Source: Bugula neritina
Taxonomy: Eukaryota > Animalia > Bryozoa
Direction of reading: 5' to 3'
Assembly: GCA_964035545.1 (NCBI GenBank)
Contig: OZ037772.1
Location: 7,362,889 to 7,426,888, forward strand
DNA: 64,000 bases
Under the pieces are notes generated by a model, which saw nothing but the letters and a program-made list of their open reading frames with translations, searched no databases and was not told where the DNA came from. A program made the translations under genes and the position numbers. Positions 25,601 through 56,800 of the stretch are shown in pieces; positions within the stretch are counted from its first letter, which is position 1, and each line of letters opens with the position of its first letter.

Positions 25601-26831
25601 GAATGTCCTTGGCCTCCTTGGCTAGAATCTCGGCTACAGTTCTGAAGAACTCGACGTAAGCCTTAGTCTTGGAGAGAAGTTCTAGAAGAGTCCAGATCTG
25701 GTCGGAGATTCCAGCGTGTTGCCTCACTTTGCTCTGTCTGTGTCTCTGGAGAAAGAGGAAGGAAACATGTCAGAGAAAGTGTGCTAGTAACAACTTGGCA
25801 CAGTGAAGAGTTCAGCAATAGAGAATACGTAAAAGTGCTTTACTTTACAGAGTTATGCCTTGCATATATACAAACAAATGCTCATCAGTTGCATGCGGAA
25901 AGTAAAATCCTAATGCTAAGTCACAAAAGAGGCAAAAAACCAAAGTCCCGACTTCTGTATATCAGACAACATGGTGTGGCAAACATCCACAAACAAATAG
26001 ATTCGGATATAAACTCTTAAATTTCAATTTTTAGAAAAATCAAATTACTTGTTTATTTGTTTGTTTGTTTGTTTTCTTTATTTCCATCAAAAAAAACAAA
26101 AGGACAAAAAAATACAAATATACAACAGTAACACAAAAAGAGCTAAATTCAATTTATATATAATATCAATCGAAGTCAAGATGGGGGCCCATGTGCTCAG
26201 TAGCATAGCTATTCAAGGAACGGGGCCCAAGTGGCAGTTGAAAAAATAGTGGGAACTATTTATTCAGATTAAGTTAAAGATTTTAGTAGGTGCTTTTTCA
26301 ACAATATTTTAAATGTGGCAAAGCTTTGATGATGTCTTAAGGTCAGAGGTAGCTTATTCCAATTGCTAGACATCTGGTAGGACACTTGACGATGACCTGC
26401 TGCGGAGGTAGAGATTAATATTTAACATCGAATTAAAATGATTAGGAAAGGTTGGAACAGTAAAACTGGGCGCTATCCTAAATAAAATACGACTTGTGAT
26501 GCTATAAATGAGAGAGAATCAGTGCAGCTGATATACTAAGTACCTGTGACAGGACAGCTTCTGCATCGGGGTTCATCGCTCCATCCAGCTCTGTCTTCTG
26601 ATCCTCATACTTAGTTTCCTCAGCAGACATTTTGACGAGGAATTTATCAATGACCTGTAATATATTAGCGGGTGAGTGAGTGGTACTAGTAGTAGTAGTA
26701 GTAGTAGTAGTAGTAGCAGTGGTAGTAGTAGTAGTAGTGGTAGTGGTAGTAGTAGTAGTAGCGGTAGTGGTAGCAGTAGTAGCAGTAGTAGTAGTAGTAG
26801 TAGCAGCAGTAGCAGTAGTAGCAGCAGTAGC

Positions 26832-26862
<31 letters not shown>

Positions 26863-29800
26863 ATAGTAGTAGCAGTAGTAGTAGTAGTAGTAGCAGTAGC
26901 AGTAGCAGTAGTAGCAGCAGTAGCAGTAGCAGTAGTAGTAGTACTAGTAGGCAGTAGCAGTAGCAGTAGTAGTAGTAGTAGCAGTAGTAGTAGTAAACAA
27001 ACAGACCTCAGTAAGTTTCTTGTGAGAAGAGAGGTGAGTGAGAGAGTGGGTGGTCTCGGGTTCGTCTGCTTCTGTGAGTATTGCAGTGACATCTAGTGGC
27101 AGAACGTTAGAATATTCTTCCTCCGCATCCTTACGACGTTGTGTCTCTCGCTTCTCCATCTCTTCCAACTCAGCCACATCCTGTAACATGACACATCATG
27201 ATTCAGCTTCAAAGAAAAAGCTGGACACATTACTGGCCTAAATAAGGTGGTGAACAGGCACATATTGACAGGTGCTGGCACATATTGACAAGTGGTGGCA
27301 CATATTGACAGGTGTTGGCAGGTGTCGGAGTATTAGGATATGTTTTGTGTGTATTCAAAGATAACTTTATTTTGATTTTGACCAGAAAACGTATAGTCTG
27401 ACTTAAACACATTTGTATTAGAAAATCCTACTCCAGGCATGAATAAAAACTAATGACACATTTCTTATGACATTTTGCAGTTTTTTGGGGACAATAATAG
27501 ACCACGGAATCCACTTGTTTTAGTAATAATTTTGCATTAGTTGCTTAATAAGCCAATCCTTAGAAAGTATGTTGTTTTGCTTAGCTGATTAGTTTGTGAC
27601 AAAAATGGCTATTGCTGATGAAGTCTAGCCTACACCAACACATGATATCAGAAGAAAGCTAGATATAATAAGTATCTGAAACTGTCAGGCATGAAAGAAT
27701 GCAAATGATGTAACAGCAGAATAAGAATATTCAAACATCAAAAGATGACATGAGAGTGAAATGGGAATATTAAAATCTATAAACAATCTGTGGAATAAAG
27801 AGTTTTATCATTTGAAAAGCAATTGAGAGACTTGAACTAAAATAACTCTCATTTTAACACTTGGAATTGTTATTCATCATTATGCAAATGAGTAAATTGT
27901 GTGTTTTGATGTGCAAACTTCACAAGATATATATTTATAGCTCTGTATGTCTTCACACAACAGACGTATAATGAGGTGGAATATTAACAGTGAAAATAAC
28001 TTTACTCCTCATGAAGAGCCTACAGTTAAAGGGTGAGGGACTGGAAAAAATCAATTGCATTTTTCTGTACTGCAAATGCAGAAAATGAGCAAAGTTTGCC
28101 TGCAGTTAAATGTAAACATAAAAAAGGATCATAGTTTAATTCTGAAATCTCTAAGTTCACAAATAAAAATATGATCACTATTTACGCGCTTAAGTAGTAT
28201 GAATTTGCAGCTAGAATAAATTTAAGTACAGACCTGTTGCATGGCTGCTAACTGTTTCCTGGTGCTGTTCAGTTTGATGGCCCCGTAATTAAACAGAATC
28301 TGATTGGCTACTTTTCTCTCTTTCTCTGCAAGCTCCACCTCTTTTTGTCTGATTCTCCTCCAATGAGATTTCCTAGCTGCAGTTTCTTCTTGCAGCATAG
28401 CCAGAGCTCCTAGAAATCAAAAAGAAATTAGTCGAGGTGAGGATACACAAGTGTCACATGATTGTCACAGTCTAAAATGTTACAAAATGTCACAAATCAA
28501 ACCATCAGATAAAATGATTCAAACACTTTTAAGACCATTCCTAATAATCTCCATCAAAACTGGAATAAAAGATTTCAATAGTTAAGCAGGAGCTCACAAC
28601 ATTTTTCTAAAAATATTTCAAACATACCCAGTGGAGCTTTTCTCTTCTTATGTCCACCAGAGGCTAATGTGACAGGCACAACAACGCCCGTCTCCGGATT
28701 ACTTCTTACACCAGTCACAGGGCTAAGTTCTGCAGTGACTGGGTCTACGGCCTTAACCCCAATAGTTATTGGCACCAAGCCAGTGCCTTCAGGGTGTTCC
28801 ATACTTCCACCCAGCGGTTTGATCTGCCAAAGCAGTATACAGCAAAAGGAATAAACTAACTCAATAAGTTTGGCTCATGCACACATTTCTGAGATAAAAC
28901 AACGAAGAGAATAAGCATGTTGTCAGTTAAAAAAAGGATAAATTGTTCACCTTTCCAGTCAGTTTGTCCTTCTCTACTCCAAGAACTGGCACAAGCAGTC
29001 CAGATCCACCTGGATCTTCCATGTTTGTACCAATAAGTATGGGCAGCAGTTGACCTGTCCTCACAAACTCATACATTCCTGCAAAGCATTTTCAGGAGAT
29101 AAGGCTATAAACAAAACCTAAGATACCGCAAATTACCAGTACAAAATCCAAACAAACTGAATTAGCAAGAAACAACTTGAAAAAAAATAAAATGCATCAA
29201 CAGTTCAACTTTGAAATATATATGGCTGCTAACATTTATATTAGAAGAAATGTAGGATTCTTTATATTTACTAATAAGTTTCGACTGAAATTGGAAAACA
29301 ACGAGTAAAAAAACCAGTACAAATCTCATCTCATACCTGGTGAGCCTCCAGTAGAAGCCAATATGGCCGCCCTTTCCTCTCTCCGTTTAACATCATGCTC
29401 CGATTGTTTCTGCACGGAAAGCATTCTAGATCTAGCAGTTAGCAGGTCCTAAAGGGTAAATAAACTCATAAGATAACTTTATATGTTATATGTATCATCA
29501 CCTTATATGGCATACATATGATCACCTTATATGGCATGATTACCTTATATGGTATTCAAAAATTTAAAGGTTGATTCTAACTAATGGTGTGCTAATAGAT
29601 AACATTTTTAAGCAAACAAATGACAGCTAAAGATTAATCACAGTTACTAACTTGAATTTACAAGTTCAATGCTATGTTTAGATGTAAGATGAATAACTAC
29701 CTTGTAACCAGACTCCATTTCTGCCTCCTCTAGCCGAGAGTTGACAGTTTCATCATCAGGTGGAGGAGTAAATATGGCATCTCCAAACTGACTCAGTTTC

Positions 29801-32800: not shown

Positions 32801-35800
32801 CCACAAAACAGTTAGTAAATACATAATTCAATCTCACATCAAAACAAACAAGAATAGAAAACTCAAGACATATTTACAACATCAGATCAAAAGAGGGGAA
32901 GCATAAATCACAGGGGACAGTACGATGCCTGAAGGTATGCACTCATGCGTAAAAATTGGTTAATAGATCACTTGCAAGTGTTACTTAACTTTCACAAAAA
33001 GAACTATAACGCAAGTGTACAAGAAAATTATGACGAAATACTTGGTTCTTTATAGATAAGCAACTGAACTATTTCAAAAAATCAATAAATTCAAATTCGC
33101 AATATCAAACCGCCTGAGAGAAAAAGCAGAAGACATTAAATTAAAAAATCTTCTACTACTGAAACACAAGTCACAGTGATAAGGAATCCTACCTTCTGGT
33201 ATAAAGATTTCGCTTCCTCTTTCTGCCGAGCCAGGTTCTGGGTGATGGAGTGAGACTGACTGGCTAGTTTGTCGTAGAGCGTGCTCGCAGTGAATGCTTC
33301 CAGATCAACCTGCTGCTCGTAATCCCAGAATTCATCTTCTTTCACTTCCTTCAGCTCTGCACCTGAGTTTACACAACAATTTTCAATAAACACAAAAACA
33401 AACAAAAAAACATAAAAGACAGGTTAATTAATTTGGAAAAATAGTACAGATGCATACGGGTATATTTTACTTAATTTAGTACACACTACATATCTCTAGC
33501 TTTTAGCTATTTCTCACAGTTTAGCTGCTATTGTATATAGTTTCTTGCAGTACAATGATAAAATATTAACATATACAGCTGGATGAGCAAGATTTTTTCT
33601 AATTTTGCATGTTTTATCCTAATTTTTTAGCAGATCTGGGTGTGCAGGCCTGACACTTTATCATCACGTCTGCACACCCAGATTTACTAACAATTGGGAT
33701 AAAACATGGAAAATAAGTGAAATGATCGAGATTCAATATCAGAGTAAACCAAAATTGAGCAACAACTATTTCAACAGGAAATGCGAGTACCGCCGACAGA
33801 TGCGTCTGCTGAGGTGATGGCCAATTGAATGTCGTTGGGGGAGGAGCTATGAGTGTTCATATTTCGGTGGTACTTCTTAATGGCGTGGACGTTGGAGCCA
33901 CGGCTAGAGTAGTCGTCAAATGGCTTGCGTTTAGTGAGCCACCTGTAGCTCTTGTCAGCAAACATCAACTTGTTCCAGCCGTATCTCTTGAAGAGAACCT
34001 ACAGATGTGACATGGACTGTGATTGGATAGTAAAGCTTACTATTTAATAGAAAAGCCTTTGTGATTGGTCAATTAGACTACTCTGTAACTTTAAAAAAAA
34101 ATTATCTTCTTTTATTTAAGTTGATTTAAAACTTGAAGAAGATGCAAGCGCAGAAATGTAGGAGCAAAAAAGTCACTCCTCTTCAGTCAGCTGTGTTGGA
34201 ATGTCATTATCTAGCGCTGCCGGACATGATTAGTTATTGGACTTCACGCTGACTGACAGTTTTCAATCAGACATTGAACTGGAATAGTCTAGCAAATAAT
34301 AGAAATTCGCCCTAGAGGCAGCGAAGTACATGTCAGATGCTGCTAGCACTTGTAGAGATTAGGACAACCTCATTATTTTCGTGTCACAAAGAAATTGAAC
34401 TAGAATTTGCTGCTTATACTTCCTCTATAACAGTATACAGCATGCAAACTATAGCAGTAACATTGTATACACCTCAAATATCTCACTTTCTAATTTGCTT
34501 AATTTTGATTAGCCACAGAACATGTTCCATTCATCAGATAGCCAACTAAAATAATCACTACTAAAGTTGGTTTAACTAACGGCTGTACCATTCTTATTTC
34601 AGAAAGTAATTACAACTAACAAAAAACCCTGCTTCATTATCACTGCAGTTCCATGACTGAGCATTCTGGGAATGGATGCTCACATATTAATTAGTGGTTG
34701 TGGTTTGTATCAGCTTATGGTTACTTTCATCCCATGTAGCTGTTTGCAAACACCAAATGAAAAATCTATTCACATGGAAACGCAGTGTATAGCAGTGCGA
34801 CTACCCTTACAACTCTTGTAACAAGACTGTTTTACTATAGACAGCTGTTGTAGGAAAGTATTGGTAACAATAGTCAACTATTACCCTTTCCCCAGCATGT
34901 CTGCCCAATAATATGACAGCAAGTTGGCAGTAACTGCTGACCCTTACCAGAGCAATGATGACGACTATCACCGTCAGCAAGATGGCGACACACATGAGAG
35001 CAATGAGCACCCAGTCAGGTGACTGCAGGATATCCTGTTCCACCGACATGCCGTTCTGTATGACGTAACGCGGAGTTGTGGGGAAGAAGGGTCCATCTTC
35101 GGAACACTGGGCATTGGGTGCCATCACTTTGACATACTAAAAGTATTGGAAGTACAAAACGCGCATTCAAATTAAGAAGTCACATTGAATAGGAGATTAT
35201 CTAAGCTAAAATTCTACTGAATGCAAATAGAAAGACAAAATGGAGTTTAACTATAATTTTCTTTTTACTACCTTGGAAAATAAACAGAAACAAGCTTTTA
35301 CCAAATGATGCAATAGCCTGGAAAACCCGAGGTATTGTGCCTACCATTTTCTTGTTGATGTTGGAGCTGAGGTAGAAGACGTATACCCCAGGATCCTTGA
35401 ACCTGTATGTGAAGAGGGTGGTGGACGTCTCGGCCTGACTCTGAGCCTCCTGTAACTCTCGGAATCCGCCATAGTCAAACTTATCATTCGTGTTGTACAG
35501 GTTGTTTCTACAAACAGGAAATACAAGATAATAAAAGTGAAATGGAGACATACTGATTGCTGCTAAATATAGAACAAAACAAACATGATAATAAAAAACA
35601 CACGGAACATGACGAAGGGGATGAGACGGGCTGCCAATATAACATCAGATAATCCTTCTACCCAGATTACTGTTAAAAAGGAAGCCACTAAAAGTATTCT
35701 GCAACTAGCTACTTTTTTATGATATTAGAAAGATGGACACTAACTCAGCATTTAAATATAAAAAAGTTTACTCTAATGCATTCTGCAAAGTGAATATCAA

Positions 35801-38800
35801 ATGATGCATTTTCCTTATTGCGAAATATGTCACTTTCTCTCAAGTCTATTAACATTAATCCAAAAAACATCTAAAGAAACTTCATTATTATAAGATCTTA
35901 GGCAAACTGCCACAAATCTAATTAATAAAAAGCTCTAAAAAAACATTTCAATGGAAAGCAATCATATATGATATGTGAGCTCTGAATGTGACAGTCATAA
36001 TGACAGAAGCTACAGGGCATAGCGCACTTGTTAATGAATGTCAGCAACAAAAGTAAAAATAGGAAACGTGACATAAATAGGAAAACATGGTAAAAAGTCA
36101 TAACCAGTTGGAAAAATGGTAATATAACAAGTCACAACCTTGCATAAATTTGTCATTACAAATTTCTATTTTAATACATGTGCATCGTCACCAAAGTTAT
36201 TGCATTATAGACATTTAAAAACATTACATAAAATCGTATTTCTATATTTATGTTGCTAAGACCCAAGCACAATAAAAGAGTAATAAGTATTCTATATGCA
36301 TTCAAGTACACACTTGAGTGCATATCATCGTTTGATTATGCAATCACAGTACGACTTCTTACAAACAAGTTCCAAGACTTAAAAGACAAATAAAAGTTTG
36401 AAGAGAAAATTAGTTTTACATCTATAAGCAAGAAGAAAGAATGATGAAGGAATAGGCTTGAGGCATCAAATATAAATTATTATTGATTAGTTCTTCGGAA
36501 GAAATAAATACCTCGGCACATGAGTGCATGTTTCAATTGAGCTCAGGGTGTTCAGTTTCCAAGTACAGCTATACGCAGCGCAGGCACTGTTTGATACCTT
36601 TTAATTACATGCTTTGAGAAACTGCTGCGATATAGAGTAGATGTTAGTCATGATTTTCAATCTGCTTTTTGTTGGGACACTAATGATAATGTGCTGTGCA
36701 CAAACGAAGCAGATGGAAATGTCCAGGTAAAATTTATTTCTATCTCAAACATGAACATTGTTATTTCTTTGCATTCCATTATTAATCTATTATTTCAATT
36801 AAATTTATAAAAACAATTTTCAACTCTTTCAAGTACTGTCAAAATTGAATCTCTGAAAAAATGAAGTGTTTATTTTCAGCAGTTACACATTTTGGACTTA
36901 ATTCCATACTGTGTATTTGCAAGTAGTTACCATTTGTGTGTGAGACCAATTGCTAATATTTTTGGTTATTAGAGCAAAAAAAAGGAGAAATACTTTGTTG
37001 AGATTTGAGACATGTTTTATGCATCGGCTTTGATGTGTTTTATTAGCAGTGATCTGGGAACAAGAAGTGAAACGCAGACAGTCTCAAAGCGTGCTTTCGG
37101 TGAGTTACAATGAAATTCCAAAAGTTTTGAAAGGCAAAGTTTTCTTTTAAAATCTGATAGGAAGAGACAAATCTTTTTATTAAAAAAAAATTAATGAATA
37201 TTTTTTAAAAGTCAACAGTCACTGTCAACAAGGTTATCCCTGCAACCCTGCAATGCTAATTAATACTGTTGTGATTTGCGTTGTATATATTTAAGGTCAC
37301 TTAAACTTGGGGCCTGAACCAGACTGGATGGTACTTTTATCAGAAGGTAGGACCCGCAGACCTTCTCCCAGAAGGAAGAAATTCAGCAGGGTGAGAGAGC
37401 CATATTTTACATTCTAAAACTATCATACTTATATATTCTAAAAAAGCTGTCTACAGAAACATTGACCTATACTAAGTTCAATTGAAATAAATATCAAATT
37501 AAATACAATTGTAATTCAAAAGGCAAAATAGAGTTGTGAATTTCAATAGAATCTAATTCCGTAATAAAATGGTTGATATATCTGGCAGAAAGTTCCCTTG
37601 GCTGCTGAACCCCAAGTAGTCTCTGGAAAGCTATTCAGTGACATCCAAGAAGACGCAATAGAAAAGGAAATATTGGAAGCAAACAATGAGATCTATCGCA
37701 AGCGCTTGCTAGAGCTCATGGGAGAGATGGTGAAAGAGAGAGGAGAGGATGAGAGGAGATCTCCAGATCAGCTTGGAAGTAAAGAAAGCAATGATGAAGA
37801 GAAAAGGGTGTTTGGGTCACTCAGAGAGATAAGAAAGAGTGTGGGAGACGACGGAGAGAAAAGAGTTTTTGGATCTTTTAAAGAGTTGAGAAGTTTTGAT
37901 GAAGCTGATTTTGATGAGGAAAAAAGAGTTTTTGGCAGTCTGAGGTAAGGCTAGAAAAATAACAACTTTTCAATTGGTAAGAAACTCTGTTCTGTATTTC
38001 TTTTGATTTGATTAAATAAGCTTCATCAAGCTGGTAGCCAGTTACAATGCAAACTATAACCAGCATTCCTTTACACGTTGGCAGACAAATACGAGAAGTA
38101 GGAGGGAACACCGGCTATATGAATGAAAACACGGCTACACACGACCTCTTGGGCAGAATGAAGGTAATAACATTTATTGAGCAGATCTAAAAGTTTGAGG
38201 TAGAAGTGCATAAAGATATGTGTAAAAATATATATTGTGCCAGCACCTAAATAGTTTCAAGGAACTTCTAAAGTAATCAAACCTAAAAGAAGCTGCAATT
38301 GTTTAAACTACTAGCATGTTATGTAATGTTATGTTATGTAATGCCTGTTTCAGTGTAACAACTTTATTAGCTTTGACAGAGTATAACAGCTGCCCACACA
38401 GGTAGCTGGTCATATCAAGTACCAGTACAAAAGGGTTTAATTACAACTGTGGCATTGTTTAAATTTAATTGAATTTACAATTTAGAATTTCAATATTTTT
38501 CAGAAACTTGAACAGGCTGAAAGAATGAGGAAATGGAAGAAGCAAGAGAAAGCTAGAGGTAGGAGATTGCTATAAGTTGGTACATGGATATCAACAGAAT
38601 GGGGTAAACTGAAGTAATACAATTGAGCCATCAATAATAATTTATAAATATTTATTTATAGATTATGAGAGGGTGGAAGCAACAAAGATGGATACGTCAA
38701 TGAATTTACCAGTTTCTAAAGCCAGGTAGGAAATTATATGCAGTTTTATATCTAACTAACCTATAGCATGAAAGTTTGGGTGAAACGGAGTATTTTAATT

Positions 38801-41800
38801 TTTTTAGTTCTTTACTGATTTGATGAGAAAAATAGTTGGAATAATTACAGAACATATAAAAAGTAATAAGAATATTCAAGTACAGAGATACAGATGCTTA
38901 GATAAATGCAAAGCTAGAGTAAAATTTTATTATTTATGAATAATTAACCGGTGTTTATGTAACTTGAATTTACCATCTCATCTACAGCCTATAGTATTTT
39001 AATTGCTATGATATTATATGTTAAATATACTATTATCAATGGTATAAATATTATACTTTCAGATAAATCTTAAAATGCCATTTTTCAGGGCAAGCATAGA
39101 GAAAACAGGAGGTGAACCCGAAAAAGAATCTAGAAAAGTAGTTGTTGATGAGGTTAGTAGGAAAGTGACAGCATTCTTACAAAATCTGTGTTTGTATTTT
39201 CTAGAATTCATTCAACCCTGGATGAATTTTAGAAATTACAAAATTAACATTAAAACTGATACACGATATTGCAGATGGAGATGTACAACAGAGAGGACTA
39301 GTAGAGATGAAAAGGTTCCCCAAGCTTCTAGCAGGTTCTAGAACAAAATATTTATTTAAATAAGTTTCCTTATAGATATACCTATTGACTACTGAGAGAC
39401 TGCTTACACCCCCCCCCCAAACCCCCACACACAAACAGTAAATACGTGGATAAATAATATAAACTATATTACTCTCTTTCTCTTTGATGTATGCATCCTA
39501 CCAGCTCATCATATATTGCAAGAAGTCTTCTTGCAGAAACATTATGTTTGGAATCCAAAACTCAAAGTAGAACAATTAATGTCAACTATCTATGATATCT
39601 TCATATTACTATATGCTTTCCTGTGCAAACTTTATATTCGTGACCTCTTCTATATTTACAGTCAATAAAATTAACTGTTGTTAAAAGATGCAAAATTATG
39701 TTAAATTACCACCAAGAGTTGTGCGCACACACAGCAACAGCCATACGTTATGATACAACTAAATTAAATAAAATAAAATTATCAATATGATATGGTGCAT
39801 AAAAAATATAATTTATTACACTACGTCACAACAGAAAATATGATCCAAAATAATGTATAGCATAAAATGAGAACTTATTAGCATATACATATATGATACA
39901 TTAAAGTAAAACATATGGCTACAATACATTAAGTATTATATTGAATATTACAATAAAGTAACCAATAATTTGTAAGCTTCAAAGCTCAGTCACTTTTAAG
40001 TCAGTTGAAATGTGCTGCAAAAATGAAGGAGGCAGCAAATAATTTATTTATGGCAGCTATTCGCTGCCTACATAAAGTCTTCTTTAGTAAACAAATTCTA
40101 TCACATATCACCATCTACCTATTGTGACACCAGCCTTGTACATGTATGCTGAGTTACACAGCAATTAGCCTTCAAATCCTACATTATGGAAGTGGAGGAG
40201 CAGGCACGCCCCCTCCCAGATTAGTTTACGTACAAGAAAATGTCTTTCTTGAAATATAATCCAAATTTCTAAGAGTTAAAGAGCAGTAGAGCTGCCATAG
40301 CCTCACAGCAACTAACAACTGTTACATGATGTTACAAAAATTTAGAAATCAGCTCATTCTAATCAGCATTTAAATAAAGCTCATCCTTGTGAGAAACCCT
40401 GATGGAAAAGACTTGTTAAAGCGGGCTAAGGACTTATTAAGATGAGGCACAGGAGAAATTATGACTGGATGCTCTTCGTAACATCACCAATGGCCTTTGT
40501 CGCGGCTCGAACCCATGACTTCGTGCTTACTAACCCCTAGACCAGGGCTAGACCAAGTTTGTTATTAATGCAAAAATGGTATATAAACTCTTTGTGACAT
40601 TTTGAGCAAACTGTTACACAACTAATTAATAAAAAAAATTCCATAGCAAACCTTTCTATGAAAATGTATCATAAATAATATATGATCTCTGAATTTGACA
40701 GTTTAACGGCTCAAAGCTACCAGCATATAGAGCACTTGCATATGAATGTCAGTAAAAGAAGCAAAAATAGGAGACGTGATAAAAATAGAAAGACAGCAAG
40801 AATTGTTGAAGATGCCATAAAATTTACAAGCTTGCATAAATTTCATGATTAAAGCTTTTCTATTTAAATGTACATCTCCACCAAAGTCATTACATTGTAG
40901 ATATTGAAAAATATTGTATAAAACATAGATGTCTATTGATAAAACCAAAGCAAATTGAAAGATTATCAAGTATTCTATATGCTTTCAAGTGCATACTTGA
41001 GTGCATGTCATTGTTTGATTATGCAGTCACAAGTCTGTAGGGTTTAAGTTACAATTACCCACTTGTACAGCTTGTTTGTTGCTTCGCTATTTGTTTGTAA
41101 CAACAGGATATTGAAACAGGAAGTAGAAATTGTTCATATTGTCCATATTGTTTTATTATCATGTATGATTTATGCTGCCTATATAAATGGTTCAGTTTTA
41201 TATAACAAAACAGTTACGGTATAACAGTACAAAATTGTAACCAAACCACGTTATACATCGCATATAACAGAAATACTTCACAAGATAAAAGGGACTTCTT
41301 ACAAACAAGTTCCAAGACTTAAAAGGCAAATATTTTAACTGATCACATATTTTGAAGAACTGGTGAGGTATCTACAGTAGATGTTAGAGTGATGACTTTC
41401 ACACTGCTTTTTGTTGGAGCCCTAATGATGAGCTGCTGGGCACGACCAGAGGAGATGGAAACTTCTAGGTAAAATTTATTTCTATTTTAGATTTAACTAT
41501 TGTTACTTTTTCGCATTCAATTTTCAATTCACTATATCAATGAAACAGCTAAAAAATTTCCAACTTTCTTGAGCAAGTCAAAATACTATCAAAACTTAAT
41601 CTTTTGAGCAAGTAAAGACGTTAGCTTCAGCTAGTCACACACTGGGACGTATTTTCACTTTGAATATTTGCAAGTAGTTATCAATTGTATTCAAGAAATT
41701 GACAACTTTCTTGCTATTAGAGCAGGAAAGAGGAGAAAAGCTTCATTAGATTATATTTGAGACAGTTTTATGTATCAACCTTTGGTGTGTTTTACTAGAT

Positions 41801-44800
41801 ATGACGCGAGAAGGAGAAGTGAAATGCAGCCAGTCTCAAAGCGTGCTTTCGGTGAGTTACAATAAAGTTCCAACAAATACAAAGTTTTCTTTTAAAAGAT
41901 AGCAGAAGACAAAGTTTTATCTTGACTCCAACAGCTGCTGTAAACAAGGTTTTTTATTCAGTGAAGCCCTTAAGATTTATTAATACTATTGTGAAGTTTA
42001 TTGTATTCATTTAAGGTCATTTAAACTTGGGGCCTGAACCAGAATGGATGAAGCTTCTATCAGATGGTACGACTCGCAGACCTCCCACCAGAGAGAAGAG
42101 ATCCAGTGGGGTAAGACTGCCATATTTTAACATTCTAAACCTTTGCCTACAGAGGCTTTGATGTACTAAGTTCAATCGTGAAGAGGTGCACGTAAATGCA
42201 ATTATAATTCAGACAGCAAAACAGAAATGTAAAAGAAAACCGCTGCTAAAATCTTTAATAAAATCTGACTCCGTAAGTAAATAGTTGATTTTTCTTGCAG
42301 AGAGTTGCAGAGGCTAGTAAACCCCAAACAGCCTTTGAAGAGTGGTTCAGTGACATCCAAGAAGACAAAATAGGAAAGGAAATATTGGAGATAAGCAATG
42401 AGATCTATAACAAGCTCTTGTTAGAACTCATGGGAGAGATGGTGAAAGAGAGAGAAGAGGATGAGAAGGCTGTATTTGGATCTCTAGATCAGTCGAGAAG
42501 TGATGAAAGCAATGATGAAGATGTCAGCGAAGAGAAGAGGGTGTTTGGGTCACTCAAAGAGATAAGAAAGAGCGATGGAGATGATGAAGAGAAAAGGTTG
42601 TTTGGGTTACTTAGAGAAACATGAAAACTCTCTTGAGCAAGTCAAAATACTATGAAAATTGAATCTTTTGAGCAAGTAAAGAACTTAGGTTCAGCAGATT
42701 AATGGCTAGTCACACAAATGTATTTCCACTTTGTGTATTTGCAAGTAGTTATCATTTGCATTCAAGAAAATTGACGATTTTCTTGTTATTAGAGCAGGAA
42801 AGAGAGGAAAAGCTTCATTAGATTATATTTGAGACAGTTTTATGTATCAACCTTTGGTGTGTTTTACTAGATATGACGCGAGAAGGAGAAGTGAAATGCA
42901 GCCAATCTCAAAGCGCGCTTTCGGTGAGTTACAGTAAAATTCCAACAAATACAAAGTTTTCTTTTAAAAGATAGCAGAAGACAAAGTTTTATCTTGACTG
43001 TAAACAAGGTTTTTTAATCAGTGAAGCCCTTAAGAGTGATTAATACTATTGTGAAGTTTATTGTATGTATTTCAGGTCATTTAAACTTGGGACCTGAACC
43101 AGAATGGATGAAGCTTCTATCATATGGTACGACTCGCAGACCTCCCACCAGAGGGAAGAGATCCAGTGGGGTAAGACTGCCATATTTTAACATTCTAGAC
43201 CTTTGCCTACAGAGGCGTTGATGTACTAAGTTCAATCGTAAAGAGGTGCACGTAAATAAAATTTTAATTCAGAAAGCAAAACAGATATGTAAAAGAAAAC
43301 CCGCTGTTAAAATCTTAAATAGAATCTGACTCGGTAAGTAAATGGTTGATTTTTCTTGCAGAGAGTTGCAGTGGCAAATAGTCTCTAAAAAGCGGTTTAG
43401 TGAATCCAAGAAGACAAAATAGAAAAGGAAACATATCTATGATATCGTCATAGTACTATATGCTTTCATGTGCAAACGTTATTCATGATTTCTTCTAAAT
43501 TTACGGTCAATAAAATTATCTGTTGTCAAAAGATGTAAAACTTTGTTCCATTACAACTAGGAGTTGTGCGCACACACAGGAACAGGTACACTTAATAATA
43601 CAACTAAATTAAATAGAATACAATTATCTATATGATATGGAGTGGGAAAATATAATTTTTTACAATACAACATGACAGCAAACATGACATAAAATAAAGT
43701 TCAGCAAAATATAACTTATTAGCATATACACATATATGATCATACATTAAAGTAAAACATACCGCTGCAATACATTAAGTATTACATTGAATATTACAAT
43801 AAAGTAACCCATAATTTGCAAGCTTCAAAGCTCAGTCACTTTTAAGTCAGTTGAAATAAATTGCGAAACATGAAAAAGGCAGCATATAATTTATTTATGG
43901 CAGGTATTTGCTGCCGCCACAATGTCTCCTCTAGTAAACAAACAAACTATCACATATCACCATCTACCTATTATCATACCAGCTATGACGTACTGATATA
44001 CACTTGTGTACTGAGTTATACAGCAATTAGCCTTCATATCTTACACTAATAGAAGGGATGTGCATGTACGCCTCCTACCTGATTATTTTATAGACAGAAT
44101 CTGTCTTCCTAGAATTATAATCTAAATTTCTAAGAGTTAAAATATATTTAGAATATAAATTACCGAGGGCACGCGCACCAATGAGAGATAATAATGCAAT
44201 ACATGACATCAATACATAACGTTACGGTATGTCAACAGATTGTAGGCTGCAGCGCAGAACAGTAAAGTTGCAATAGAAGAGCTTCACTTGTAATGGAAAC
44301 TTATCTAAGCTTTATTGATAGCAGATTTAAAAGGCAGACAACTCTGTAAGAAAGAGTTCTTAAATAATCAAATATTCCTTTGAATGAGTAAATAATGAAA
44401 GTCAAATGCAGGAATTTGTGTAATGAAATCATCTCACACTCAGAACTTAGTGCGACTACTATAGCCTTCATTTCCTTTAAAACTTGGAAAAATAAACAAA
44501 GTTGCATCGTTGACGAAAAATAAAAACTCGAAAATTCGGAATACAATACATAAACTATGAATTATGAAATAGTCCAAGAACACCTAATCTTACACAGCAA
44601 TAGCATATGATTCATTTGTGAGCAATATGCAAAGAGTAGACAATTTCAAACTAGCAACGAATGCCTTATAATATGCTGTAATAAAACTTTTAAAAAGACA
44701 ATATAATATTATATTAAATGAGTCTAAGAATCTAAAGTGAGTGATATTGACGAAAAGAGAAGACAACTGCGTAAAAAATTGCTGGCATGTTTTATTAGAC

Positions 44801-47800
44801 TTGTTATAAACCAAATAATAATAGAACAGGCACAACTTGGAAAGTCTTTTGTGATAAAACAGTGCTACCAAGTCATACTTCCTTTCAAAAAATATTTCAA
44901 TAATCTGTTAGACTGAGCAGCTACAAAGCTAATGTTGAAGTTTCGAAATCGATTAATAACACTTTAGTCTTCATGAAAATATTGAAATAAAGATTTATAT
45001 TGTGTGAGTGTGTAGGGGGTTGAGAAGGTAGGGGTGTATAGGATAGGGGTGGAGAGTGTAAGGGGTAGGAAAGGTAGGGGCGGAGATAATAGGGGTGGAG
45101 AGTGTAAGGAGCTGTAGAAGATGAGTTAGCAAATGACCTACAAACAAGCTTCAACCAATGACATTCACTCACCGATCATAGACGGGGTAGTTCTCGTTAG
45201 ACACACTGAAGAACATCGTCTCTCCATACTTCAGACACACAGTCGGGTTTCTGATGCCGTTCAGATTGTTTGCACTTGTGGCCAATAGCTGTCTCTGTTG
45301 TATGTTGTTCAAGTTGTAATCTACAATTTGATTGGCTAATTTACAGAAAATGAAACATTTTGATATGATAGAAATATTATTGTGATGTAATGAAAATATA
45401 AAAATAAGAAATAGTTTTTACTCACCAAAACCAGCACCTAAAAAAATAAAAGAAGTTTATTAAACACAATTTATAAAAATAATTGAAAATAAAGATATGT
45501 GCAGCAAATAAGAAAAGTATTAGCAATCATTGTATGTAAAGTTGAAAATTTTGTAAAATTTAATACTCACTAGTTATATTCCCGGTGTAGTTTCCTTTAG
45601 TGTTGGAGGTAAGCAGGTTGATGACAATGGACGGGTCGGGTTGGTAGACACCCACAAAGCCCGAGGAGTCCATGTCTATGAGGTGAGCGGGCTCGGTGTA
45701 TTCCCCGACACACTGATCTTCTGTGATGGTGTTGCGGGAGTTGATGACCTTACGAAGGTTATTAGCCGGGATTTGTACCTGCAGAACATACGGTACGGAT
45801 CACAGGCATTGCTTGCAAGGACCATGAAACTTGAAACTTGTAGATTATAAGAGATTAAATGATACGTCTACAAGAAGGTCAATTTACTTTATCCGTAAAC
45901 TAGGACCAAACCTGCTTAAAAAAATCACAAAACCTTTCAATTTAGGATATTTTCATAAGCTGATTTGGAATATGTATAAAAAACTGACTAAATTCCCGCA
46001 ACACTAATGAAGCCTTTAAATGCAGGCATACAGAATGGACTTTTACAATAACATGGTTCACTATAATAATTGAGAACCGAGTAATGATTATAAATAAACA
46101 TGTAAAAATCTGTGTTTCTTGACTAATGACGTAAGAAAAACCTTGAACACTGTAAAACAATTTGGAAAACATTTAATTATTTTAACTTATTTGCTAAAAT
46201 TTCATTAGTTCAAGGCAGAAAACACATGTAGGTTAGCACCTATAGTTATATAAAATAAGCAAATTAATCTAAAGGCTCACCTGAACTTGGCCCTTTTGAT
46301 TTCTAACTTCAATGAAAGGTTCGAGTGGAGAGGCCGGGCAGATGAAGGAAATACTGTATCTCTGTGCAAGACGACATTCAAGGTCACACACTTCTTCAAG
46401 GTCGTCTACTTTACATTTACATAAACCCAGTATGGTGTCTACTCCAATGTATGACTCACACACCTAAAGTGCAGCAGACGTTTACCAAAAGTATGAGTCA
46501 TCAAGATGCAATGCTTTAGTCAACACACCAGCTAATAAAACTAGTATGTGTTGTAAGTTGTAAAACTAATCAGACTGAAATAACAACTAGTAAAAGAAGT
46601 ATAACTAATAACAATAATCTAACTAGTACACATTAAAACTAGTAAATTATGTAATTTTACTAAAATTAATTTAACTAACACATGTAGTAAAACTAGAAGA
46701 AGTATAAATAGGGAAACTGAAATAACTCTTATAATATGAAATGTTAAAAAGAAAATATTATAATAAGAATGTAAAGCAAAAACATCAAAAACTTATAAAT
46801 AGAACAGAAGAACTGTAAAAGTTAACTGTTTTTTTTATTAATAAACTTAGAAAGGAGAATCTAAAGAGCAAAGGCAAAAATATCAAATGGAGAAGAAAAA
46901 AGTGATAATTTATGCTAGCAGTACCTCTTCAGAACAATAACTCTTCCATTGATCAAGGTCGAGACATTGGCCATCTTGGTTTCTTGTTTGACCTTCAGTA
47001 CAAAGGTCATATACTCTCTTTACGCAATCGGTTTCTCTCTCTTCTAAGAGAGTAAATCCTGCTGCACATGGGCATTGTCTGTCCGATGGCTGAAACGTCA
47101 TAGGGAAACGATACAGAAACATGATGACTCATCATAGCGAATAGGACTTGTAAGTATATTAGGTGAACATTTCACGAGTCAAATATAAGCTTCATTCAGT
47201 TAGTATGTATTTAAAAACATGATCAACAAAACCATTTTTAGAAAGAACTACGAACCTGGAAGTCACGCCCACTTCCTGTGCATTCACATGTGTCACTTCC
47301 TTCCACTGGTTGGCTAGCTTCTCCGCCGCAGCTGAAGCAGCCCGTTTGACCAGTGAGGTGGTTGAAATGGTCTACCGGGCAGTCCAGGCAGTCCGAGACG
47401 CTCCCCTTACTCTGAAGAGCATTGTATGTTCCTTTAGGGCACGCTAAGGGAGCCCCCGATGTTTGCGGGCAATAGTAGCCGGGTGGGCATGGGTAAGATC
47501 TGCCAAGAGAAGCATAAATATAATTTTATTACAAATGACAAATATTATAAAATTAAAAAAATTACCAATGTATTTTGAAACGAGTAAAACAAATTTCTTC
47601 TTTTATTATTATAAGAAAGAAGAAAACTTATGAAATAATTCTGAAAAGAAAGTTAATCATTTTTAAATTTAGCTTTAATGTAAAAACTAGCTTCAAAGTT
47701 TGATTTTCAATTTTTAATCTGAATGCAATAAATAAACTGTTAAGATGAGGAACTGACAAATGTAGAAAATATTAAATATAAGAAACACAAAAGTAACCTG

Positions 47801-53800: not shown

Positions 53801-56800
53801 CTGCGAGACGTTGTAAAAGCCGGTCTCTATGGCGATAGTGCCGCTGGGGCACGGTACAGGATATTCGGAACCTTCCGGACAGTAGTTGCCGAGAGGACAT
53901 CTTAGATGCTCAGGTAGCCGGTCCGATACACTCCCGTTACAGTAGTAGCTGTTTAATGAGAACCAAACAATAAGTAGATTGATGTGATAGCTCCTAGTGT
54001 TGTTATAAATAACTCTAAATAAAATACACATCTGCATAAGATAGAAGGGATAAAGAGAGCCCCGTAAGTTTAGTATATTCGTCTCATCTTGTTTCATTTC
54101 ATTAACAAGTTCAACAAGAAAGTGCGTCATTTTACTTTATTTAGTACACATCAGCAAATCAGGACCAAATTGTGAAAAATGAGATATAGAGTGTGAACTG
54201 TATTAAGTTTGATGAGAAAATGGAAAAAATAGAGTGTATGTGATAAGGATAGTGATAGGGCCTAATTATTCACCAACAGAAAAACTAGTAGTGGTGCAGG
54301 CCTAACATTTTCAGCAACCAATCATTTAACTCCCATCCTGAATCATATTCCAAGCAATGAATCACCGAACACATACAGATTATCTCAACCTCGCAAAATT
54401 CACTGCAGGACTACTTTAAATGCTCGAGGTAGCCATTAAAAACAACACATAATAGTTTTTAAACCACAAAACATCAGCACCACAACAGAACATAGACTGA
54501 GTGTATTCCATACCCAGGCGAGCAGGGGCCGTCTGGCCACACCTCCCCTGTAGTCTCACAGTAGTAGCCCGAGGGGCAGGGCTGGCACTCCTCTATTGAT
54601 ACTCGGTGAGTGACGTTGTTGATGGTCCCCGAGGGGCAGGGGTACTGAGTAGCGTAGGCTGTGCCCACAGGGCAGTAGTGACCTTTGGGACAGGAGGAGT
54701 CGTTGAGTGATGACGTGGCATCATAGGTATTGTCACAGTAGAATCCTACACACAGGAGAGCAAGTAGAGAATCAACTGTGGATAACTGTTACACAGCTTA
54801 TGTAGAGTAGGCGTGTGAATACGTGACTTACTAATGTAAAACCGATACAGAAATAATAGTCACCATGTGGTTCATGTATAGTTAATTTATGTGCATAGTT
54901 GATATGTTATCATGTAATAAAATATTGTATATTATAACATAATGTATATAATATAATGTGTTATAATATGATATAACAACACCTATAATATAATAATATA
55001 TATTATAATATATTATAATAACACAATACATAATATAACGAAATTTAATATAATATATATCATATTACAATACAAAAATGCATAATATAATAATACATAA
55101 TATAATATAATATAACATAATACAAGATCATGGTAACATAATATAACAATACTGTCACCTTCATCGCAGACTCTGCACTCGAATTGACCCTCGTCTGGGG
55201 TCCAGGTACCATTCTCACACCTGTACGGAGACACTGAGCCGTCTAGACAGTAGTGACCTGAAAATCAAATAGTGTTGAGTCAGCGTCTACTATACTGGCA
55301 GCAGCATGATTAGTCAACCGACTGATCATGCAGAATGAACGTATTTTAAACATTCATTCAACCGTTAGGCCAAATCAAGTGACTAGAACTATCATATAAG
55401 CAGGGGGCAGATTTTGAACTTATAAGTTGGTCAAATTCTCTTTGATTAGCTTTTGCTAGCAGGAGACAATAAATTCACTACTTTTCCAAGCTTTGCATTA
55501 TGCGAATGAATTTTTCTTTCGATGTTTGAACACAGTTGCATCGAATGAAACAACATGTAAACAGAAACCACAAATTCACCCGTAGAAGCATCCATTCACA
55601 TAATGTGAAGTAATAAAAACACAGTGATAGACTCTGATTGGGTTGCTATGAGTCATTGACAAACGTTTACACTCACCGGGTGGGCAGATGTAGTCAGTAG
55701 GTGTTGGAGTTGTCTGCCCTTCAGGACAGTAGAATCCTCTAGAACATTCTCCGGTGACGACAGAAGAGCCAGGCTGTGAGCAGTAGTATCCGGCAGTACA
55801 GGGTGTGCACTCAGACTAGAATATAGGTAGAGTATATGTACCTGTTGACCATCTACTCAGACTATCTTCTGTCTAATATACTGTATGCAGAGTGTATACT
55901 CAGACTATATCTACTGTATACTCAGACTATATCTACTGTATGCAGACTATATCTACTGTATGCAGACTGTATACTCAGACTATATCTACTGTATGCAGAC
56001 TGTATACTCAGACTATATCTACTGTATGCAGACTGTATACTCAGACTATATCTACTGTATGCATACTGTATACTCAGACTATATCTACTGTATACTCAGA
56101 CTATATCTACTGTATGCAGACTATATCTACTGTATGCAGACTGTATACTCAGACTATATCTACTGTATGCAGACTGTATACTCAGACTATATCTACTGTA
56201 TGCAGACTGTATACTCAGACTATATCTACTGTATACTCAGACTATATCTACTGTATGCAGACTATATCTACTGTATGCAGACTGTATACTCAGACTATAT
56301 TTACTGTATGCAGACTGTATACTCAGACTACAAAAGGTTTACCTGACTTGTTAGCCGGAGCTGGTTGCTAAATGTTCCATTATCGCACGGGACGGGGGTA
56401 GAACTACCCTCAGGGCAGTAATGACCAACCGGACAGTCAATATCCTCAGCTGTAGAGGATCCGTTGGGACAGAAGTATCCTTCTGCACACAGCCCTGTCA
56501 CATTCTCTCTGCAATATTTCCACAGTATATGACATGTCTGTTTACTAAATAGTGTATTATAATATATTATTAATTATAATATAATGCGGTATAAACTATG
56601 CACCAGCTATGGAGCAGCCGTGGTCTAAGGGTTAGAGCTTTTGCCTAGTAAACACTGGGTCATGGGTCCGAGCCTGGACAAAAGCCATTGGTGATGTTAG
56701 GAAGAGCATCCAGTCATAATTGCTCCTGTGCCTCATTTAAATAAGTCCTTAGCCTAATTTAACAAGAAACCCTTTCCATCAGAGGTTTCTCACAGGGATG

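What the first reader, a model, noticed from the sequence alone, without database searches (positions are those of the whole stretch)
36650..39301. Unrecognised multi-peptide prohormone-like gene hidden antisense in an intron of a giant Cys-rich receptor gene
Seen: the host exons flanking 35508-45172 splice in phase (..YPVYD-R-NNLYNTN..), so the whole 9.7 kb is one intron, far longer than the others. On the opposite strand it holds a complete 9-exon gene: signal peptide, acidic spacers ending in EEKR/GEKR, and repeated short peptides VFGSLREI, VFGSFKEL and VFGSLRQI, each closed by R or RK, then a poly(A) signal. Established: signal + acidic spacer + dibasic convertase site + repeated short peptide is the layout of neuropeptide precursors and of some defence-peptide precursors. 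Inference: I cannot match the xFGS[LF][RK][EQ][IL] motif to a named family (only loose resemblance to xFDSI pedal-peptide/orcokinin N-termini), so it may be a new peptide signalling or defence family.
Basis: partly seen in the sequence, partly recalled or inferred. Interest (0 to 1): 0.88.

Follow-up and report, generated by a model that had tools for sequence, protein, structure and literature searches.

The report
Bryozoan xFG neuropeptide precursor, intron-nested
A real gene hidden on the opposite strand of a long intron in the moss animal Bugula encodes a neuropeptide-type precursor that is conserved at the same spot in two other probable bryozoans, and it is most likely the bryozoan counterpart of the 'pedal peptide 3 / PFG' peptides of ribbon worms and oysters rather than a wholly new family.

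Summary
The gene is real. Nine plus-strand exons splice in phase into a 288-aa secreted precursor, inside the largest intron (9,665 bp) of a giant single-pass Cys-rich protein gene of Bugula neritina. Sibling haplotypes (88% DNA identity) keep every covered splice site, have no exon indels (17 in introns) and no amino-acid change in the peptide blocks. Two more distant animals, probably bryozoans, carry an antisense KR-xFG peptide gene in the same host intron with the same intron phases. The conserved core is xFG[ST]x[RK], in peptides of about 8 residues, amidated in one species. The closest described family is nemertean 'pedal peptide 3' / mollusc PFGx8amide (KR-PFGS[FL] repeats, lone first copy). 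The defining Pro1 and amide are absent in Bugula and no formal clustering was possible, so orthology is probable, not shown (about 55%). Defence role unlikely. No RNA or peptide evidence was obtained. I found no earlier description in papers or in this scan.

The parts
36650..36726 (+). Copy 1 exon 1: start codon and hydrophobic signal peptide (cleavage probably after Ala17, inferred)
   Evidence: phase-2 intron after the signal also in L036
37050..37099 (+). Copy 1 exon 2: short pro-region, KR site and start of peptide 1 (A-F-G split by a phase-1 intron)
   Evidence: 98% identical in L004; same phase-1 intron in L036 and L037
37296..37390 (+). Copy 1 exon 3: rest of peptide 1, conserved P-x-W..L motif, basic furin-like stretch
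   Evidence: no amino-acid change in aa 39-60; homologous 104-nt exon, phases 1 to 0, in L036 and L037
37589..37944 (+). Copy 1 exon 4: helical/acidic spacer, peptides 2 and 3, and the first five residues of peptide 4
   Evidence: phase-2 intron inside the last xFGSx-R peptide shared with L036 and L037
38085..38163 (+). Copy 1 exon 5: end of peptide 4 and start of the C-terminal tail
38504..39152 (+). Copy 1 exons 6-8 (38504-38558, 38662-38725, 39089-39152): charged tail, frame and splice sites kept, sequence under little constraint
   Evidence: tail pN 0.085 vs pS 0.064, p = 0.77
39205..39225 (+). Alternative last exon (six codons and stop, 52-nt intron)
   Evidence: stronger acceptor; perfectly conserved in L004; not shown by RNA
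39275..39301 (+).
   Evidence: in phase; weak acceptor; not covered by any orthologous locus
41392..42624 (+). Copy 2: tandem paralogue, 4 exons (41392-41468, 41799-41851, 42016-42110, 42301-42624), 182 aa, ends at a stop where a 1.06-kb duplication begins
   Evidence: dN/dS 0.64 overall against copy 1, 0.2 in the peptide block
42626..43430 (+). Copy 3: fragment duplicated from copy 2 (exons 2-3 intact, no exon 1, exon 4 broken)
35508..45172 (-). Host intron, 9,665 bp, GT-AG, phase 2, of a giant single-pass Cys-rich membrane protein gene

Best explanation
A neuropeptide (or peptide hormone) precursor gene of bryozoans, most likely the divergent counterpart of the spiralian PFG-type 'pedal peptide 3' group. 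Shown: gene structure, signal-like N-terminus, dibasic sites, purifying selection on the peptides, conserved nesting and intron phases in three lineages. Inferred from established prohormone biology: the precursor enters the regulated secretory pathway of neurons or neurosecretory cells; prohormone convertases cut after KR and at the single Arg of the R/K-x-x-R motif that closes each repeat; carboxypeptidase trims the basic residue; three non-amidated octapeptides with a free xFGS N-terminus are released and act on a cell-surface receptor, by analogy with pedal peptides on muscle or ciliary activity. Peptide 1 has lost the downstream KR that L036 and L037 keep, so in Bugula it would be released as a longer peptide. 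The nesting is an old positional arrangement with no shown functional link to the host.
For: Selection: 0 of 186 non-synonymous vs 7 of 48 synonymous sites changed in the peptide blocks, p = 1e-5; 0 of 17 indels in exons, p = 0.001. Orthologues in the same host intron, antisense, with shared intron phases. G-KR amidation signals on two L036 peptides. Protein-language-model neighbours include several neuropeptide precursors, all below 0.9 and so only a lead. Nemertean pedal peptide 3: KR-PFGS[FL] repeats, lone first KR-VFGSI copy, long acidic spacer, several peptides detected by mass spectrometry in Lineus. By eye, copy 2 shares two short collinear spacer blocks with the Lineus precursor (7 of 8 with one gap; 7 of 9); chance about 0.0025 and 0.005 each for shuffled spacers of this composition. 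The genome has the FDSIG pedal-peptide gene elsewhere, and this locus holds its only tandem KR-x-FG repeats; three single KR/KS-PFG hits lie in short open frames. Monobasic cleavage with an upstream basic residue is documented in PMC8557429.
Against: Position 1 is Ala/Val/Ile/Leu, never Pro; 3-4 copies instead of 7-20; the basic residue is at position 6, against 7 in most nemertean copies. The more distant orthologues have S/T at position 5, so the F/L match with nemerteans may be secondary. The two spacer blocks shared with Lineus are not conserved in L036 and only partly in L037, and were picked after the fact. No database search linked the gene to any named protein. A three-residue N-terminal motif can arise more than once.
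Confidence: 0.55

Rival explanations
1. A bryozoan-specific neuropeptide family. It works as above, but the xFG start arose independently of the PFG/pedal peptide 3 group.
For: No hit outside bryozoan-associated samples in 1.8 and 5.8 billion proteins; none of the core hexamers tested occurs in the held supplements of PMC8557429; peptide length (about 8) and Arg6 differ from both described groups.
Against: Sequence searches miss short-motif families, and did not even find L036/L037, which are orthologues by position. The lone first copy and the VFGS first peptide match the nemertean layout. The genome has no other PFG-type candidate.
Confidence: 0.32
2. A degenerate member of another known family with an FG near the N-terminus: lophotrochozoan proenkephalin-like (KR-[YF]G-x-L) or achatin (xFGD tetrapeptides).
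For: KR-FGxL starts in oyster and nemertean opioid-like peptides; VFG/IFG starts in nemertean achatin.
Against: No N-terminal Cys domain (only Cys15/16 in the signal); an extra residue precedes Phe in every copy; peptides are not tetrapeptides closed by KR.
Confidence: 0.05
3. A defence-peptide (antimicrobial or toxin) precursor of the frog-skin type: signal, acidic spacer, EEKR, repeated peptide.
For: Acidic spacers ending EEKR; recent tandem duplication.
Against: Peptides are 8-mers of net charge 0 to +1, invariant between haplotypes that differ 12% in DNA, and single-locus in three lineages; defence peptides are typically cationic and diversify (established knowledge).
Confidence: 0.05
4. 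Not an expressed gene (pseudogene or chance frame).
For: No transcript seen here.
Against: Exon-specific conservation, conserved splice sites, absence of exon indels, orthologues with the same intron phases.
Confidence: 0.03

Closest known systems
Nemertean 'pedal peptide 3' precursors (Lineus, Cerebratulus, Tubulanus, Notospermus; Thiel et al. 2021, PMC8557429)
   Same: Signal peptide; lone first KR-xFG peptide soon after it (VFGSI in Lineus and Cerebratulus); long acidic spacer with a Y-x-K-L-L-x-E-L-M block; later KR-xFGS[FL] copies, some separated by acidic spacers ending EKR; mostly non-amidated.
   Different: Nemertean copies nearly all start with Pro, are 9-11 residues, number 10-20, and the precursor ends in a P-[VL]-Y-Y-like motif; here 3-4 copies of about 8 residues, no Pro1, a long charged tail over several small exons.
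Mollusc PFGx8amide / PFVx7amide (Stewart et al. 2014, PMC4200219; PMC5996578)
   Same: KR followed by x-F-G at the peptide N-terminus; multiple copies; amidated copies exist in the L036 orthologue.
   Different: Pro1, 11-12 residues and a C-terminal amide define the family; none holds for the Bugula peptides.
Bugula BnFDSIG-like and BnPep-like pedal peptide/orcokinin precursors (Wong et al. 2016, PMC4990251)
   Same: Same animal; non-amidated multi-copy KR-flanked peptides; one FDSIG variant begins SFGG.
   Different: Different gene on another contig; D-S-I-G / E-R-I-G cores absent here.
Lophotrochozoan proenkephalin-related (opioid-like) precursors
   Same: FG-x-L near the peptide N-terminus after KR.
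   Different: They have an N-terminal Cys domain and start directly with Tyr/Phe.

Membership tests
Neuropeptide prohormone (general kind) | N-terminal signal peptide, no other membrane span | tested here: met
   Hydropathy only; SignalP not available
Neuropeptide prohormone (general kind) | Similar short peptides flanked by basic cleavage sites and acidic spacers, conserved more than the spacers | tested here: met
Neuropeptide prohormone (general kind) | Expression in neurons and detection of processed peptides | not testable with these tools
Nemertean pedal peptide 3 group | KR-x-F-G-[ST] at peptide start | tested here: met
Nemertean pedal peptide 3 group | Pro at position 1 of most copies | tested here: not met
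   Ala/Val/Ile/Leu in all copies of three lineages; the first copy of heteronemerteans also has Val
Nemertean pedal peptide 3 group | Lone first copy separated by a long spacer from the later copies | tested here: met
   (compared by eye)
Nemertean pedal peptide 3 group | Similarity clustering next to pedal peptides 1 and 2 (how the group was defined) | not testable with these tools
   The paper's sequences have no tool reference, so alignment and clustering were left out
Nemertean pedal peptide 3 group | Shared synteny or intron positions | not testable with these tools
   No named nemertean or mollusc genome reachable; P0010 contig had no DNA
Mollusc PFGx8amide | P-F-G plus eight residues | tested here: not met
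   about 8 residues in all, no Pro1
Mollusc PFGx8amide | C-terminal amidation (G-K/R) | tested here: inconclusive
   Absent from the Bugula repeats; present on two L036 peptides and possibly a terminal L049 peptide
Pedal peptide 1/2 / orcokinin | [FL]-D-x-[IL] N-terminal core | tested here: not met
   Gly in place of Asp; the FDSIG gene is elsewhere
Proenkephalin-related | N-terminal Cys-rich domain and peptide starting with Tyr/Phe | tested here: not met
Antimicrobial peptide precursor | Cationic amphipathic mature peptide, diversifying sequence | tested here: not met
   activity itself not testable

The most novel reading that the evidence does not exclude
A bryozoan-specific neuropeptide family (xFG[ST]x[RK] octapeptides) unrelated to pedal peptide 3, held antisense in the same intron of a giant membrane-protein gene across distant bryozoan lineages, with its own unknown receptor.
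Probability: 0.32. Interest if true: 0.5.

Novelty: new variant of a known kind. Interest (0 to 1): 0.4.

Why it matters
Bryozoan neuropeptides are barely catalogued: the one dedicated survey I found lists 11 precursors and not this one (PMC4990251), and the spiralian survey did not cover bryozoans (PMC8557429). This adds a well-supported precursor with predicted mature peptides from three lineages, ready for synthesis and for tests on larval swimming, settlement or polypide retraction in a model fouling animal. If it is the PFG/pedal peptide 3 orthologue, it extends that group to Bryozoa, and the conserved nesting gives a positional test of orthology for a group defined only by clustering. 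It is not a new kind of system: lineage-specific or divergent prohormones and intron-nested genes are both common in animals.

Tried and rejected
Protein searches with exon 4 and with an alignment found only the sibling-species copies; P0002 and P0003 are acidic low-complexity chance hits. Pfam, PDB and Atlas gave no family. Metagenome scans found nothing real: blank; the two hits are one unrelated protein without repeats. Single KR-x-FG matches elsewhere in the genome lie in short open frames and are no more frequent than the control. The alternative frame of exon 3, which also reads like FGSLK, has a stop and does not fit the splice phase. RNA folding of the 3' end was unremarkable. Literature searches found no description of these peptides; some supplementary files are cut, so absence is not proven. 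Left out on the operators' instruction: no database search with the joined spliced model (searches were exon by exon, by reference; the joined model was built only inside scripts from /data and compared with loci already fetched), and no alignment with the papers' nemertean or mollusc precursors, which have no reference and were compared by eye.
Full report
Organism. The window lies on contig C8 of a 216-Mb genome. The genome encodes six copies of the BnFDSIG peptide described for Bugula neritina, and the closest homologues come from a JGI metagenome whose record names carry AY690838, an accession that occurs in the B. neritina mitochondrial genome paper and other bryozoan papers. I take it as a member of the B. 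neritina complex.

Observation. The only hydrophobic stretch is at the N-terminus. Three EKR-preceded peptides start at aa 148, 167 and 188. A fourth, KR-AFGHLNLG at aa 41, is split by intron 2 and was missed. No shuffle out of 20,000 gives even three dibasic-x-FG motifs. The host exons on the minus strand join in phase across 35508-45172. A rough model of the host over the window plus 20 kb gives about 100 exons, over 5,900 aa, 105 Cys motifs and one membrane span; this intron is the longest (9,665 bp; median 419). Pfam support for the Cys repeats is weak (Ephrin_rec_like, E 0.002, below cut-off), so 'receptor' stays an inference. Two details need care. The poly(A) signal is uninformative.

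The gene is under selection. L003 and L004 are two haplotypes (96.6% alike) about 88% identical to the window. In L004 all covered splice sites are kept; exons are 93.6% identical against 88.5% for introns; there are 0 indels in 840 exon bases against 17 in 1,682 intron bases (p = 0.001); the peptide blocks show 0 of 186 non-synonymous and 7 of 48 synonymous changes (p = 1e-5). The C-terminal tail keeps its frame but its sequence is unconstrained.

Paralogues. The same intron holds a tandem copy at 41392-42624 (four exons, 182 aa, dN/dS 0.2 in the peptide block) that stops where a 1.06-kb duplication begins, and a further fragment at about 42626-43430. No other copy exists in the genome, and this locus has the only tandem KR-x-FG repeats.

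Orthologues by position. Sequence searches found nothing beyond the sibling species. Searching with the downstream host exon gave host orthologues. In L036 and in L037/L049 the same host intron (2.7 and 5.9 kb) contains an antisense gene with a signal peptide and KR-xFG peptides. Intron phases match: phase 1 inside x-F-G of the first peptide, phase 0 after the next exon, and phase 2 before the Arg of an xFGSx-R peptide in all three; phase 2 after the signal in Bugula and L036. A P-x-W..L block follows peptide 1 in all three. Predicted peptides: L036 AFGNARLH and VFGTSRTN, both followed by G-KR, and IFGSSR (end unresolved); L037 type VFANTRIEE, AFGTTRIQ, IFGSSRINS and a candidate terminal VFGSSRI-G whose exon chain I did not fully resolve. 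Host identity over 258 aa is 84% (Bugula to L037 type) and 75% (to L036), so L036 is the outgroup. Sample names (BRYA16) point to the plastic-debris metagenomes of PMC5069773, where 30-90% of eukaryotic rRNA reads were bryozoan; that link, and that both animals are bryozoans, is inferred.

Mechanism. Shown: structure, selection and conservation. Inferred from prohormone biology: secretion, cleavage after KR and at the Arg of the closing R/K-x-x-R motif (such monobasic sites are documented by mass spectrometry in PMC8557429), trimming, and release of three free octapeptides, with amidation in the L036 lineage. In Bugula peptide 1 has lost the downstream KR kept in both orthologues and would be longer. 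Action on a receptor in muscle or ciliated cells is an analogy with pedal peptides, not tested. Neutral charge and invariance argue against a defence role.

Comparison with known families. The gene is not among the 11 Bugula precursors of PMC4990251, and no match appeared in the held supplements of four lophotrochozoan surveys (some files are cut). [quoted passage not shown] Heteronemertean precursors have a lone first KR-VFGSI copy, a long acidic spacer and then KR-PFGS[FL] repeats. By eye, copy 2 shares two collinear spacer blocks with Lineus (RRPP-TRE; Y-x-K-L-L-x-E-L-M); shuffles put each at 0.0025-0.005 by chance, but they were chosen after the fact and are absent in L036 and partial in L037. 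Pro1, peptide length, copy number and, in Bugula, the amide differ. So it works like a pedal-peptide-type neuropeptide precursor; it fails the literal PFGx8amide definition; membership of pedal peptide 3 is probable but untested by clustering or synteny.

Limits. Earlier notes of this scan list other Bugula peptide-precursor genes but not this one.

Verdict.

Noticed in passing
window 41392-43430 (+): Truncated tandem paralogue (copy 2) and a 1.06-kb partial re-duplication (copy 3); copy 2 has an extra degenerate VFGSL unit after a KA instead of KR site, where copy 1 has a deletion.
   Followed up: yes
window 2907-64000 (-) and at least 19 kb beyond (L039, L040): Host gene: about 100 exons, over 5,900 aa, some 3,300 aa of Cys-rich repeats, one membrane span near 34950-35030 and a long Cys-poor tail; highly conserved core (75-84% identity in L036/L037); function unknown, model rough.
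   Followed up: partly
Only a raw translation was viewed.
   Followed up: no
window 26502-27092: Long Thr/Ala triplet low-complexity tract (poly-Thr on the minus strand) that the rough host model includes; may be intronic repeat.
   Followed up: no
window 55836-56371: Tandem repeat array of roughly 30-nt units inside a host intron, giving spurious ORFs in three frames.
   Followed up: no
L036 5200-5100 and L037 4000-3980 (minus strand): TGACG/CGTCA (CRE-like) words lie shortly upstream of the start codon of both orthologous peptide genes; seen by eye, not tested against chance.
   Followed up: no
L027 (G000:C3 near 27,770,550): The known BnFDSIG-like pedal peptide gene, with six FDSIGNGPIG copies in one exon.
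   Followed up: partly
P0010 contig (ENA ERZ26052378, 2.09 Mb): A further host orthologue on a long contig with several opposite-strand ORFs upstream of the exon; DNA unavailable, so nesting could not be checked.
   Followed up: no
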